Assembly: GCF_964204645.1 (NCBI RefSeq)
Contig: NC_134036.1
Span: 558,001 to 622,000, forward strand
Source: Tubulanus polymorphus
Lineage: Eukaryota; Animalia; Nemertea
DNA length: 64,000 nucleotides
Direction: 5' to 3'
This document shows positions 43,435-49,400 of this stretch, one piece after another. The notes under the pieces are model-generated. The model made no database searches, was not told the DNA's origin, and saw only the letters and a list, made by a program, of their open reading frames with translations. Position numbers and translations under genes: made by a program. The stretch's first letter is position 1. Each line of letters opens with the position of its first letter.

Positions 43435-46400
43435 GACGCGTCGAATTCATCTTTACGTCGAGCGTCAGAAGACGAAGGAAAAGCTTACTACATGCAGGCT
43501 CAACAACTATCGGCCCAGGCGGCCACGAGTCACCTGACTCATATGTGTTCACTCGACATCGACTCCGAACCTCATGTCATCCGTATGACGGGGATTATCT
43601 GTACGATAGGTAAGCATTTCTTATCACTTTCTATACGACGTATATCCCTGAGGTAAGTAAGAGAGACGGCGATGATGAGACAGTATCGGGGGAAATTACG
43701 AATCCATCTTTTATCGAGTTATACGTAGCCTCTCTATTTTCTGAAATCATTTATTGCGCGCTTCATCGCTGAGTTCAGGTTTTAGACATTTTAAAACCAG
43801 GGCCTGGTTTCAAAGTCACGACTAATGTCCAAAATTGGTCTTAAATCTTAAAACTGATCTTAAGTTGTTAGATAATCCATAGAACTAAGATGGTCTTTGA
43901 CTGCTTAAGTCTAAGCCACATGGCTATAGGCAACTGACCCCCCAGTAGAGACTTTGCTTTGGGCACTTTATAGAAGACTTGAGGCCTAAGTCCCACAGTT
44001 GTTGGATGACCTTAGAGCATTTGAACTTAAAAAGTTTTGGGAATTGACGACTATGGAATGACTGGGTCTCTGACCCTTGAGGAAACTGCCTGGTGTCGAG
44101 TCCTAGCTACAGCACTGTGTCTGGGCTCGAGTCCTAGCTACAGCACTGTGTCCGGGCTCGAGTCCTAGCTACAGCACTGTGTCCGGGCTCGAGTCCTAGC
44201 TACAGCACTGTGCCCGGGCTCGAGTCCTAGCTACAGCACTGTGTCTGGGCTCGAGTCCTAGCTACAGCACTGTGTCTGGGCTCGAGTCCTAGCTACAGCA
44301 CTGTGTCCGGGCTCGAGTCCTAGCTACAGCACTGTGTCTGGGCCCGAGTCCTAGCTACAGCACTGTGTCTGGGCTCGGGTCCTTGCTACAGCACTGTGTC
44401 TGGGCCCGAGTCCTAGCTACAGCACTGTGTCTGGGCTCGAGTCCTAGCTACAGCACTGTGTCTGGGCTCGAGTCCTAGCTACAGCACTATCCGTTGGTAT
44501 GGCTTTCTAGCCTTATTGATAGAACATTCAGCTTTTGCTTTAGACGCTGACAGTAGACTTTGGGCACAAGTTATCAGATGATTTTAAGACTTTTGTTCCA
44601 GGGATTTTGGGTGCATGGAGCGGAGATCATTAGATGTTGACTGGGTCCTGACCCTTTGAGTCCTAGCTACAGCACTGTATCTCTGTTAATGTTTATATGG
44701 TTTTCCAGCCTGATACTTGTAGAGAACATTCAGCTGAAAAAAAGTGAACACATAACTGTTTTATTTCTATACTCACTGAACCGACGGCGGCATATGCACG
44801 GGTATGAATACCACAGCGCGGTATACCACACCAGTGATAGTATACTGTGTATCTATACCATTGGCGTTTGGCGTATACCATCAGTCATACAGTAATATTG
44901 GCGTCAATCAGTAATATTGTAATAAGTGTAACGTTCACCTGTTGAATTCTCTAAGAAACTTCTTTTTTTAACTCATGTAGATGATTAATCTTATAGAACA
45001 AGCTCCCCTCGTATTCCACTCATAGTTACACTCGCAATGCTGCTGCTGCTGCTGCTGCTGCTGAGGCAATTTGTAAACTTTGTTTTTCTCCGTAGAAATT
45101 CGTCGGAAACTTGTGGAATTGTTTTACAAAACGTTCGAGAAATGTATCCTATTTTACACTAGAAATCATTCATGAATTTGACACAACTGGCAGCAGCTTA
45201 CAACGTCAATATTCAACCAGCTCAGAGGTTAAAAACCAAAATAGAAAGATTTTTAAAATACAGCGTACTTGTCTATGAAACTGTGCCTCGAAAAATCGAT
45301 GATATTTTCAGCGGAAAATTTCCGAGAAAAATTGGTTTAGATTTTGTATTTATTACCGTTAGTTTCTATGGTTACGTGGTAAGTCTTAAAACTAGCGCGG
45401 CGTCGCGTGTCCCGAGGGGTGGGTGGGTTTCACACTCTATAACGTAGTTTGTTAGTTTACGTATAGATGTCGCTGCGGTGCGATGTAAATTGATACGTGT
45501 TTGTGGTGACAGATGGCGAAGGTGTAGTGACCTTATATCACGATGCAGGCAGTGTTTAATGAGGCTTCTAAAGGGAGTTTATTATCGGCAGCTTTCATTA
45601 AATCGATTTATACCCATTGAAATCAAAACGTTTATCAGTCTTTTAATCTCTGATTCTATTATTAAATACCATTTAATTCTATACGCACAGTTATTAAGCT
45701 CTTTAGCAAACATGGTTTTAATGCATAATTAACACTGATTTATATCATTAGCCTGGTTTTATAGACAGGCCTCAACTTTTTATTTTCAATTGAGTGAGCT
45801 CCCCGGGTTAAAGTTGATACCAGTCTACAAACCAGCCCTAGGGCTCAGTTTTATAGACTGGTGCTCATTTAAACCTGTGCGTTAACTCAATTCAGACTCG
45901 ACTGAGTTAGTCCCCAGGTGAAATTTGATACCAGTCTATAAACCAGCCCCTGGGCTCGGTTTTATAGACTGTTATTCACTTAGACCTATCTGTTTACTCA
46001 ATTCAGATTCAATTGATGCATTAGCCCTTTGGTTAAAGTGAATACCAGTCTATAAAACTTGGCCCCGGGGTATTTTCTAATAGTCTCAAATTATGCAGTG
46101 TTTATATTGTTTGGGGATAGAACAGAAATTTAGAAGATATGTATTTGACTATTTGATCATTACTCAATTCATTCATATCTATTTAAGAATATTATGGAAA
46201 TAGTTTGGTAGATGATGAGTATGGAAATAGTTGATGATGAGTATTTGTGACGTCGTCGAGTCTCACCCCCCATTGACAGCCTCCTCTCTCTCTCTCACTC
46301 CCATATCTCACATGTTGTAGTGAAGTTGTGTGACAGACTATATCGATTTTGAGCTGCACTAGTGTACATCAGCTATCAGCCAGTCTGTGTGTGTACGGGT

Positions 46401-49400
46401 GTCTCTCGTGCCTGCGTGTTCCATCGACTGTGTGTCATCTACCGAGTAGGATTAATACATGGATTAAATCTATCCACTATTAGAGTGCTTCTGTTTAAGA
46501 TCTGTAGTGTTTTTTTTACGAACGAAGCTGCGAGATCTAGGGGGTCATTAGACATTCCGGATCGAGGGTTTTTTCGTAATTTTTTCATGTACAGATTCAT
46601 GTAGTAAGCGAGTTTGTCATTGAAGAACGCTAAGGTCACACACTATGCAGGGAATATATATAGGATCGACTTGACTATTTATTTAAGGCAAAACTAGATT
46701 TCTAAAAAGGTCTGCGATATATTTGCAGACCGCACTGTTTGATTAATCAATCTATATTGAGGTAGTTTATGTACAATCGATTTGTCTTTATTTTAGCGAG
46801 ACCCAATAACATAGTTTGATATGACTAGAGGCTTTATAGAATAGTTTTAAATTCAATACTTGTGAAACCGTGATAGAATTAGAATTTAGAAAGTTGAATT
46901 TGACGCAGTTTTATATTGTATTCAACTCTCTTTAGAAATTGTAGAGACCAGTTCGTGAGTAGTCAGAGAATATAGGCAGGGTGGCGCCACTTACCTGGAA
47001 ATCTGAAAGGGAAAAGTCGGGGAACTTTCTTTTCTTGAAAAAATCAGGGAATTATGTGAAATAGCTAAAAATCTGGGAAAAATCAGGCAAATTTGTTCAG
47101 ATTATTAGATCATACTTAAAAACAAACAGTTTGTGTTTCTCTGTTTTACGTATTTTACTGGTGTTAATTGATTGGATTCTTAGCAGATCAAGTCAGGGAA
47201 AACAACGTGTTTGTCAGGGGAAAGTCAGGGGCGATGCTGGTCCGGTCAAACATTCCCGATTTATGATTTAGATCCAAATTTGACTCAATTTTCATTCGTA
47301 GAAAAAACTACGGATCTTAAACCGCGAAACTTTCATTTCAAAACAGCGAAATCAACCGTCAATCGATCGATCGCCGTAGCGATATCGAATTCGTAGTCAT
47401 TCAAATAACAGAGTAACGGAAAATCTAGTATAAAAATGTCGTCATCGTCGTCGGCAACGCCTCCTCCGAAAGCGAGAAAACCGAAGTCACCGTTGAAGAA
47501 ACAGTTGACGATACGTAACGTGACCGAAATTAAACCGCGCGATCTGTTGATGTATACAGAGGCGAACTCTGTATTACAACATCGATGTTTATTGTCTATT
47601 GATTCTGATCCGGTCACTGAACGGACTGTAGGAATTATTTGTACCATCGGTAAGTTGTTACCCAGCCGCCCCTTAAACCCTCAGGACCCAGTTGCATAGT
47701 TGTGACTTACATCCAAAAGCGATCTTGAAATCTCTTAAGATTGGTCTTGTCGGATTAGCTATAGAACTAAGTTCTTCTTAGACTGGACTTGAATCTGAGC
47801 CATAGCTCTGTACAACTAGCCGCATGATTGGTACAGTTCATCCTCACTTGCCAGTGTGTAATTGCCTCCTGCTGAAGCTCAGGCCAATTTAAAACCCTGG
47901 CCGCAGAGCCTTCATTGGTCAGGGTCTGGGTTTGTGTGAGCTTAGCCTGTAGCTGGAGGAATCAAACTCTGGCAAGTGAAGTTAGGTAGAGTTGAGAGAC
48001 GTGACATTTTAACGCGACATTCTCATTTAGAATCTGAAAGAATATTGCTACCCGGGCCCGGAATTTGAACTCGGGTTGTGGATGGATGGGACTCTGTTCC
48101 ACATTCGAGTGGGTAATCATTGGGTAATCCTAAAACTCGGCTCCGTGGCAGCTCAGACTACTCTACGGGGACGTAGTCAATAAAACCAACCTGTCGTATC
48201 GGGACATATTGTCTCATTCAGTCTGCAGTCTGCACTGTACATGATTACAGTCTATTATCAACATATGGCACATATTTATTTATACAAAAACTGTTATATC
48301 TGATTCTAATATTTACTGGAACAGATAATATTATTGTGACTGGTAAATACTGATATTTATATTGAGTATTTCAGAGTAATCGAGTAAAATCTGAAATTTG
48401 AAGATTTAACAATTCATTTTCTGACAATTTCACGTAGTTTTGACTTATCTTCATCATCACAGAAACAACATCGGTTTTACAAATACCAGTTCTGTATAAT
48501 CAGAGACTGGTAGAGACTTATATTAACCTCAGTATTTCATCAGAGTTAATCGACGAAACCAACAGTTGATGATTTCACATTTTCTGACAATTTCTGACAT
48601 TTTCTGACAAGTTTTGACTTCACTTCATCACCAGAGAAATGAAAAGAACATTATAATGATATATACTAATTTAAACATTTAGATGTTGCAAAGGAAGGTT
48701 GTTAGGGACGGATATTATTTTGTTCCCTAACAATCACAGTTATTGTGTTACGTAACCGATGGTAACTGATTATTTAAATATCTCGTATTTTTAGGTCCGT
48801 CGTCGAAGTCAGTCGAGATGTTGGAGAAGATGATTCTAAACGGGATGAATATTGCGCGTATGAACTTCTCTCACGGAACCCACGAGGTACGACCCCCTCC
48901 TCCCCCTCCGCAGAATAGACCCCCCTTTCATCGAGGTCTCCTGATGCCCCTGTGAAGTAGGTTCAACCTGACACACCCCTGGATTAGAAAAGACCTCCTT
49001 CAACTGACCCTTAGAAAACACACCCTCTTAATTTACCCCAAAGAACTGACCCCCTAGAATGAGGTTTGAACTAACCGACTGTATTGTTGGATAGAGATTT
49101 GAACTAACCGACTGTATTGTTGGATAGAGATTTGAACTAACCGACTGTATTGTTGGATAGAGATTTGAACTAACCGACTGTATTGTTGGATAGAGATTTG
49201 AACTAACCGACTGTATTGTTGGATAGAGATTTGAACTAACCGACTGTATTGTTGGATAGAGATTTGAACTAACCGACTGTATTGTTGGATAGAGATTTGA
49301 ACTAACCGACTGTATTGTTGGATAGAGATTTGAACTAACCGACTGTATTGTTGGGTAGAGATTTGAACTAACCGACTGTATTGTTGTATATATTTCAGTA

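What the first reader, a model, noticed from the sequence alone, without database searches (positions are those of the whole stretch)
43435..47649. Duplicated first catalytic exon: one copy with the liver-PK PKA site LRRAS, one without
Seen: 43435-43609 encodes [59 protein letters not shown]. 47436-47649 encodes a paralogue (...[31 protein letters not shown]) with its own ATG and a basic/Pro-rich leader but no RRxS. Both end in the same phase-1 donor. Established: LRRAS is the PKA site of vertebrate liver PK (source of Kemptide), at a similar distance upstream of QQL. Inference: a second either/or switch controls cAMP-dependent phosphorylation, so this one gene combines PKLR-type N-terminal regulation with PKM-type exon switching.
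Basis: partly seen in the sequence, partly recalled or inferred. Interest (0 to 1): 0.8.

Follow-up and report, generated by a model that had tools for sequence, protein, structure and literature searches.

The report
Two alternative front exons in pyruvate kinase
The only pyruvate kinase gene of this invertebrate makes messages with either of two diverged copies of its front coding exon, and one copy carries an Arg-Arg-Ala-Ser kinase target at the same spot as the hormone-controlled site of vertebrate liver pyruvate kinase, though its translation and phosphorylation are unproven.

Summary
Exon 1a (43435-43609) and exon 1b (47436-47649) read as described and are the only two copies in the 268-Mb genome.

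One public run (X3) behaves as spliced RNA.

- **Exon 1a is not a first exon.** It opens with a conserved polypyrimidine-AG acceptor. LRRAS is translated only if an upstream ATG exon joins it in phase 0. The best candidates are U1 (39934-40323) and U2 (41024-41506). No junction was seen.
- **Exon 1b is at least sometimes a true first exon.** It has its own ATG, and RNA continuous with the genome lies upstream of it.
- **The site sits in a known hot spot.** The Ser lies 48 residues before the exon end. In 145 PK fragments, [RK][RK]x[ST] motifs cluster 44-52 residues before it (fish PKLR 49, mammalian 52).
- **Both features look lineage-specific.** Five related loci lack both the RRAS segment and any 1b-like exon.
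- **There is a precedent.** Amphioxus RefSeq isoforms already swap two copies of this same exon.

Phosphorylation and cAMP control are untested. I rate this a new variant of a known kind, of moderate interest. The scan had noted this same stretch before, not on other DNA.

The parts
39934..40323 (+). U1: candidate upstream coding exon. ATG in good context (caagATGg), phase-0 donor TCA|GTAAGA. It is either the first exon of the 1a-type transcript or part of a separate upstream gene.
   Evidence: Open frame. Codon-usage score is +0.12 bits/codon in this frame only. No Pfam hit. No RNA evidence obtained.
41024..41506 (+). U2: candidate upstream coding exon. Acceptor ttttttag, phase 0; donor CAG|GTTAGA, phase 0 (alternative phase-0 donor GAG|GTGAAG at 41167). 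It is phase-compatible with exon 1a.
   Evidence: Codon-usage score is +0.16 in the ORF frame and drops to -0.02 after 41506. No homologue or Pfam hit. It is the only convincing ATG-plus-phase-0-donor exon within 6 kb upstream. The junction was not observed.
43416..43434 (+). Polypyrimidine tract and AG acceptor of exon 1a. The TAG at 43432-43434 is in frame with the exon.
   Evidence: Related loci L001 and L002 have ttttcag at the homologous place. Bin-depth arithmetic on X3 places the RNA boundary at about 43435.
43435..43609 (+). Exon 1a: the N-terminal domain exon carrying LRRAS, spliced to 48795.
   Evidence: Translation. X3 contig covers 43459-43607 at depth 174. Two junction contigs 43609>48795 have depths 125.6 and 71.3. 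Closest relatives are 60-75% identical.
43453..43467 (+). Codons for L-R-R-A-S (Ser = 43465-43467): a basophilic-kinase consensus, followed by E-D-E.
   Evidence: The Ser lies 48 residues before the exon end, inside the 44-52 hot spot.
43492..43494 (+). Internal ATG (MQAQQL), in weak context (T at -3, C at +4). It would be the start codon only if the upstream exon is non-coding.
   Evidence: The equivalent residue is I, L, V or R in relatives.
47280..47435 (+). 5' untranslated part of exon 1b: RNA continuous with the genome. The start site is unresolved and lies at or upstream of about 47280-47435.
   Evidence: X3 contig 47280-47416 has depth 49.7. Weaker contigs reach back to 46422.
47436..47649 (+). 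Exon 1b coding part: own ATG (A at -3), a Ser/Pro/Lys-rich leader with SP and TP motifs, and a diverged N-terminal domain. Spliced to 48795.
   Evidence: Translation. X3 contig 47445-47648 and junction 47649>48795 have depth 134.1.
48795..48886 (+). Common exon 2 ([10 protein letters not shown]...SHGTHE).
   Evidence: X3 contig has depth 408, and its loose end continues into exon 3. Pfam PK match.
49399..49518 (+). Common exon 3. Its start is confirmed by the RNA loose end of exon 2.

Best explanation
The single pyruvate kinase gene has two diverged tandem copies of the exon that encodes the whole N-terminal domain up to the GIICTIG motif. Transcripts carry one copy or the other, each joined to common exon 2.

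Exon 1b has its own start codon and its own upstream transcribed region, so it is used at least partly through a proximal promoter. Exon 1a is an internal exon of transcripts that start further upstream, probably in the GC-rich coding-like exons U1 and U2, which fit it in phase.

The 1a form therefore most likely carries a translated Arg-Arg-Ala-Ser site 48 residues before the exon end. That is the position where vertebrate L/R-type pyruvate kinase is phosphorylated by PKA to lower its affinity for PEP. The 1b form lacks it and carries proline-directed (SP/TP) motifs instead.

Choice of 5' exon would thus give enzymes with different N-terminal domains and different kinase inputs.

- Shown: the two exons, their paralogy, and both splice junctions in RNA.
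- Inferred: translation of LRRAS (about 0.7), the identity of the upstream exon (about 0.5 for U2), and phosphorylation with a regulatory effect (about 0.35).

The overall confidence of 0.6 is for alternative N-terminal exons with a translated RRAS site. Alternative use of the two exons alone is above 0.9.
For: - Sequence and frames.
- One PK gene and only two exon copies.
- Run X3 behaves as spliced RNA, with exon-limited depth and GT..AG joints 43609>48795 and 47649>48795. Its loose end at 48886 equals exon 3 at 49399.
- Genome-contiguous RNA lies upstream of the 1b ATG.
- The 1a acceptor is conserved in L001 and L002. L002 and L005 have no ATG before the conserved part of the exon, so an upstream coding exon is ancestral in this group.
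- Residues EDEGKAYY upstream of the internal Met match the relatives' E[HQ]EG.YY.
- U1 and U2 score as coding in the right frame and are phase 0/0/0 with 1a.
- The motif position lies in the 44-52 hot spot shared with PKLR. Fish and amphibian PKLR also have an acidic +1 residue, RRYS[ED].
- hLPYK Ser12 is phosphorylated by PKA and this lowers PEP affinity (PMC6588628).
- An N-terminal phosphosite regulates oyster PK (PMC11269933).
- Amphioxus isoforms X3 and X4 share an upstream coding exon and then swap two copies of this same exon.
Against: - No read or contig shows what is spliced onto 43435.
- The U2 donor GTTAGA is weak. U1 and U2 have no homologues and could be a separate gene ending at the TAG at 41597.
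- RRAS is absent from all five related loci and from the twelve closest fragments. There is therefore no conservation evidence for function.
- Glu at +1 is not the hydrophobic residue of Kemptide, and S-E-D-E also fits a CK2-type site.
- All RNA evidence comes from one run, held as short contigs. Depths are not quantitative, and tissue and condition are unknown.
- BLASTP aligns LRRASE with IRNVTE of 1b, so 1b may keep a degenerate R-x-x-T.
Confidence: 0.6

Rival explanations
1. LRRAS is not translated. The exon upstream of 43435 is a non-coding leader, and the 1a protein starts at the internal Met (MQAQQL, 43492). The two isoforms then differ only in the N-terminal domain, with no phosphosite.
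For: No upstream junction was seen. L001 also has Met at that position (YYMQ), and several relatives have a Met just upstream (GMEHEG) that could be their start codon. A stop-free run of 19 codons is not unusual by chance.
Against: The Met context is weak. That position is I, L, V or R in most relatives. L002 and L005 have no usable ATG in the exon, so an upstream coding exon is the ancestral state. The residues just upstream of the Met are conserved as protein. Codon usage of the 19 codons is positive only in this frame. The inferred polymorphism at 43458 is a synonymous third position (inference from contig ends).
Confidence: 0.25
2. RRAS is translated but is a neutral, lineage-specific insertion, or the target of another kinase (CK2 on S-E-D-E, PKG, a CaMK) with no cAMP link. 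The resemblance to liver PK is convergent at the level of a short motif.
For: It is absent from all close relatives found. The +1 to +3 residues are acidic. Short basic motifs arise easily: 1.5-6.6% in shuffles.
Against: The position coincides within one residue with the hot spot where 19 of 24 such motifs lie in 145 PK N-termini. Non-mammalian PKLR sites are also RRYS followed by E or D.
Confidence: 0.35
3. Exon 1b is used as a mutually exclusive internal exon, not (only) as a first exon. The upstream coding exon would splice to a weak acceptor aaataacag|AGT at 47411|47412, which is in frame with the 1b ATG. This would match amphioxus, where both copies follow a shared first exon.
For: The frame is open from 47412 to the ATG. 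Amphioxus X3 and X4 use such an arrangement. RNA depth rises from 50 to 134 across this point.
Against: The polypyrimidine tract is poor. An X3 contig runs through 47411|47412 without a break, to 47416. The contig ends at 47416 and 47445 do not fit a junction at 47412.
Confidence: 0.12
4. Exon 1b is a decaying duplicate whose transcripts are noise and yield no functional enzyme.
For: Its leader is unrelated to any PK N-terminus and it lacks the QQL motif. No 1b-like exon exists in five relatives. One polymorphism in it is non-synonymous, 47541 G>A, Asp to Asn.
Against: It has an intact frame, a good ATG context and a consensus donor. Its codon usage is as good as the other exons. The core CxLxIDSxP...GIICTIG is conserved. 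Its junction contig has depth similar to 1a.
Confidence: 0.07

Closest known systems
Vertebrate PKLR (L/R-type pyruvate kinase), N-terminal PKA site (human Ser12, LRRAS; source of Kemptide)
   Same: An R-R-x-S motif at nearly the same distance before the end of the homologous exon: 48 residues here, 52 in mammals, 49 in fish and amphibians. It is followed by about 11-15 residues and then QQL. Non-mammalian PKLR also has an acidic +1 residue. The gene also has alternative 5' exons.
   Different: In PKLR the site lies in the exon shared by the R and L forms, so promoter choice does not remove it (my recollection; not tested here). Here the site sits in one of two alternative copies of the domain exon. 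The motif is missing in the closest relatives, so orthology is unlikely. Phosphorylation is untested.
Amphioxus PK gene (RefSeq 'pyruvate kinase PKM-like' isoforms X3 and X4; gene model CAH1252428.1)
   Same: Two tandem copies of the same N-terminal domain exon are used alternatively. Both are preceded by a short coding first exon and carry basic-x-x-S motifs upstream of EYFIQDQQL.
   Different: The amphioxus copies are much more alike and both follow a shared first exon. It is an independent, younger duplication. Here 1b has its own ATG and leader, and only 55% identity remains in the core.
Vertebrate PKM exon 9/10 mutually exclusive splicing
   Same: One gene yields isozymes by either/or use of duplicated exons.
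   Different: This switch is at a different exon (N-terminal domain, not the C-domain interface). It is driven at least partly by alternative promoters rather than by splice-site competition.
Oyster PK Ser11 (ERK-dependent N-terminal phosphorylation, PMC11269933)
   Same: A lophotrochozoan single-copy PK regulated through a phosphosite in the non-conserved N-terminus. The 1b leader has SP and TP motifs of the kind ERK uses.
   Different: The oyster site activates the enzyme, and the paper reports it as conserved only in bivalves and gastropods.

Membership tests
Pyruvate kinase gene, N-terminal domain exon | The exon ends in the GIICTIG motif, splits the Gly codon in phase 1, and joins an exon beginning P-[AS]-x-x-x-V...MN[IV]AR[LM]NFSHG | tested here: met
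   Downstream exons match Pfam PF00224. The exon gave 153 PK N-terminal hits.
PKLR-type N-terminal PKA phosphosite | R-R-x-S about 50 residues upstream of the end of the N-domain exon | tested here: met
   Offset is 48, against a hot spot of 44-52 in 145 fragments.
PKLR-type N-terminal PKA phosphosite | The motif lies in translated sequence | tested here: inconclusive
   The acceptor sits at 43435 with an in-frame TAG before it. Phase-compatible upstream ORF exons exist. No junction was seen.
PKLR-type N-terminal PKA phosphosite | The site is inherited (conserved in relatives) | tested here: not met
   The twelve closest fragments and loci L001-L005 have FDLKGM-type sequence instead.
PKLR-type N-terminal PKA phosphosite | Phosphorylated by cAMP-dependent kinase, lowering PEP affinity | not testable with these tools
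   Needs a kinase assay, phosphoproteomics and kinetics. The reference behaviour of hLPYK is in PMC6588628.
Alternative promoter / first-exon gene (PKLR R/L type) | Two 5' exons, each spliced to the same downstream exon | tested here: met
   Joints 43609>48795 and 47649>48795 in run X3.
Alternative promoter / first-exon gene (PKLR R/L type) | Each 5' exon is a true first exon with its own start site | tested here: inconclusive
   1b has its own ATG and genome-contiguous RNA upstream. 1a has an acceptor and is internal. Contigs do not show start sites.
Mutually exclusive exon pair | Homologous tandem exons of equal phase, never joined to each other, sharing upstream and downstream partners | tested here: inconclusive
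   Homology and equal 3' phase are met. No 1a>1b joint is listed. A shared upstream partner is not shown. The possible 1b acceptor at 47411 is weak.

The most novel reading that the evidence does not exclude
One gene builds up to eight pyruvate kinases by combining a promoter-linked choice between two N-terminal domains with the four-way choice at the PKM-type exon. One N-terminal domain has a convergently evolved PKA-type inhibitory site; the other has proline-directed sites and a basic patch. In the 1a form the enzyme would also be fused to a roughly 290-residue disordered, acidic N-terminal extension (U1+U2), unlike any described pyruvate kinase.
Probability: 0.2. Interest if true: 0.65.

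Novelty: new variant of a known kind. Interest (0 to 1): 0.45.

Why it matters
Vertebrates split pyruvate kinase regulation between two genes: PKLR, with hormone-driven phosphorylation, and PKM, with exon swapping. This single invertebrate gene appears to hold both kinds of switch. RNA evidence shows the N-terminal switch is used.

If the RRAS serine is phosphorylated, it would be an independent origin of the liver-type control site at the same structural position. That would suggest the contact between the N-terminus and the enzyme body is a recurrent handle for regulating glycolysis.

The survey also shows that basic-basic-x-Ser/Thr motifs at this spot are scattered through animal pyruvate kinases well beyond PKLR. 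This can be tested directly.

Tried and rejected
- **Word search with exon 1a.** No candidates. The tool is insensitive for short queries, because the HMMER search then found many.
- **Pfam on U1, U2, 1a and 1b.** Nothing meaningful.
- **Word search with U2.** 394 candidates, none significant.
- **Conserved upstream exon.** I compared all plus-strand open segments upstream of the exon in L001 and L002 with each other and with window 30000-43434. Nothing was significant.
- **Other ATG-bearing phase-0 exons between 41600 and 43400.** Only tiny, weak candidates.
- **Full-length lophotrochozoan PKs.** The last word search, seeded with amphioxus PK, was swamped by vertebrates. It did reveal the amphioxus isoforms.
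- **Literature search for alternative first exons in invertebrate PK.** Nothing relevant.
- **A start site at 43459.** I considered that the X3 contig starting there marks one. I rejected this because a DNA contig of the same sample ends at 43457. That points to a heterozygous site at 43458, the third position of an Arg codon.
- **Spliced-leader trans-splicing onto 43435.** Considered only; there is no evidence either way.
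Full report
**What is in the sequence**

Exon 1a (43435-43609) translates to [11 protein letters not shown]...GIICTI plus a split Gly. Exon 1b (47436-47649) translates to an ATG-led peptide rich in Ser, Pro and Lys that ends in the same GIICTI plus split Gly. Both exons end in a phase-1 GTAAG donor. The common exon 2 starts at 48795 after tttttag and completes the Gly codon.

The genome (268 Mb, 77 contigs) has one pyruvate kinase gene. It holds exactly two copies of this exon, 55% identical over the last 31 residues. 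BLASTP between the two copies gives E=1e-9. DNA similarity is confined to the 3' half of the exon and the donor, so the duplication is old.

It is therefore an internal exon, not a first exon.

**RNA evidence**

The look-up of sequencing runs listed four runs of one study, none labelled RNA. When laid on 43000-48950, run X3 behaves as spliced RNA:

- Its depth is confined to the exons and is zero in most intron bins.
- It holds GT..AG junction contigs 43609>48795. There are two contigs, with depths 125.6 and 71.3. They are probably the two alleles of a synonymous A/C site at 43608 seen in DNA of the same sample.
- It holds a junction contig 47649>48795 with depth 134.1.
- Its exon 2 contig runs on into letters that are exactly the start of exon 3 at 49399.

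Both forms therefore exist as RNA at the same order of abundance in that sample. No contig joins 1a to 1b.

Upstream of the 1b ATG, X3 has genome-contiguous contigs at 47280-47416 (depth 50), with weaker ones back to 46422. The rest of the 1b-to-exon-2 intron has none. Exon 1b is thus at least sometimes a true first exon with its own start region.

For 1a, summing the contig depths in bin 43398-43596 leaves room for RNA only back to about 43435. This fits use of the acceptor. It is an inference from coarse figures. The upstream partner lies outside 43000-43434 and was not seen.

**Is LRRAS translated?**

The closest relatives of exon 1a are unnamed genomic fragments, 60-75% identical. I fetched five of their loci, L001-L005.

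- L001 and L002, the two loci aligned at the DNA level, have a ttttcag acceptor at the homologous place.
- Their exons begin [F/L]D[LIV]KG[M/L/I]EHEG.YY.Q.QQL.
- L002 and L005 have no ATG before the conserved core, so an upstream coding exon is the ancestral arrangement.
- Amphioxus isoforms show the same arrangement: a short coding first exon followed by this exon.
- Here, the residues just before the internal Met (EDEGKAYY) are conserved as protein. The Met position itself is variable in relatives, and its context is weak.

Within 6 kb upstream, the only convincing ATG-bearing exon with a phase-0 donor is U2 (41024-41506, or ending at 41167). It is preceded by U1 (39934-40323). All junctions are phase 0. 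Both score as coding in that frame only, at the level of known exons. However, they have no homologues or domains, and they could be a separate gene that ends at 41597.

I put translation of LRRAS at about 0.7 and U2 as the partner at about 0.5.

**Is the motif meaningful?**

In 145 PK N-terminal fragments, 19 of 24 [RK][RK]x[ST] motifs lie 44-52 residues before the exon end:

| Group | Motif | Residues before exon end |
|---|---|---|
| Fish and amphibian PKLR | RRYS followed by E or D | 49 |
| Mammalian PKLR | RRAS or RRVS | 52 |
| Unnamed invertebrate-like fragments | RRMT, RKMT, RRKFT, RRGS, KRNS | 44-50 |
| This gene | RRAS followed by E | 48 |

The acidic +1 residue is therefore not a disqualifier, although S-E-D-E also fits CK2. 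Chance occurrence is 0.3-1.5%, computed post hoc.

Against function, the RRAS segment replaces FDLKGM-type sequence and is found in none of the closest relatives. It looks like a gain in this lineage.

In human L-PYK, Ser12 is phosphorylated by PKA and this lowers PEP affinity (PMC6588628). In oysters, an N-terminal Ser11 phosphorylated by ERK raises activity (PMC11269933). N-terminal phospho-control of PK is thus established in both vertebrates and lophotrochozoans.

**Exon 1b**

None of the five related loci has a second copy between the 1a-type exon and exon 2, so 1b is lineage-specific among those sampled. Its leader has no acidic residue for 30 positions. It has TP and SP motifs (KSPLKK) and a basic patch. 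BLASTP aligns LRRASE with IRNVTE, a possible degenerate remnant. Its codon usage and junction depth argue that it is functional.

**Comparison and verdict**

The arrangement works like a hybrid of PKLR (alternative 5' ends, N-terminal phosphosite) and an exon-swap. It differs from PKLR because the site is inside the swapped exon. It differs from PKM because the swap is at the N-terminal domain and is at least partly promoter-driven.

Amphioxus RefSeq isoforms X3 and X4 already swap two younger copies of this same exon. The principle is therefore not new, though I found no paper describing it.

Another agent's note calls the organism a ribbon worm; I did not check this.

This is a new variant of a known kind, with interest 0.45.

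Noticed in passing
L001:16297-20265: In a related animal's PK locus, the intron after exon 3 holds about 40 tandem 100-bp units. Each is derived from the 3' part of exon 3 ([26 protein letters not shown]), and many carry stops. It is a satellite born from a coding exon.
   Followed up: no
window 48794-48886: The X3 contig of exon 2 has depth 408, while the two 5' junction contigs sum to 331. A third 5' partner is possible, or this is just contig-depth noise.
   Followed up: no
window 43199-43397 and 46980-47377: High-copy repeats flank both alternative exons on their upstream side. Depth is in the thousands in all four runs, with many loose ends at 47161 and 47200-47209.
   Followed up: no
window 44031-44578: A tandem repeat of about 31 bp inside the 1a-1b intron, GC-rich (0.54-0.56), gives rotating 30-codon open frames.
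   Followed up: no
window 49031-49507 (minus-strand frames): A 33-bp tandem repeat fills most of the intron between exons 2 and 3.
   Followed up: no
window 4400-10162: A plus-strand gene upstream has pieces that look like an RFX-type DNA-binding domain (5481-6046, judged by eye and from memory). It also has a 978-codon low-complexity exon with no Pfam hit.
   Followed up: no
P0001 (CAH1252428.1, Branchiostoma lanceolatum): The deposited gene model strings both alternative copies of the N-terminal exon in series. It also contains a repeated internal block ([11 protein letters not shown]...). It looks like a mis-joined model of a gene with alternative and repeated exons.
   Followed up: partly
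window 43458, 43608, 47541: Polymorphisms between samples. 43608 A>C is synonymous (Ile). 43458, inferred from contig ends, is the third position of an Arg codon of LRRAS. 47541 G>A changes Asp to Asn in the 1b leader.
   Followed up: partly
P0024, P0054, P0072, P0044, P0115, P0138: A group of unnamed PK N-termini carries R-x-R-x-G-S-Q-S-S-Q-S or KRRGS/KRNS just upstream of the N-domain. This is another recurrent basophilic motif family at this spot.
   Followed up: no
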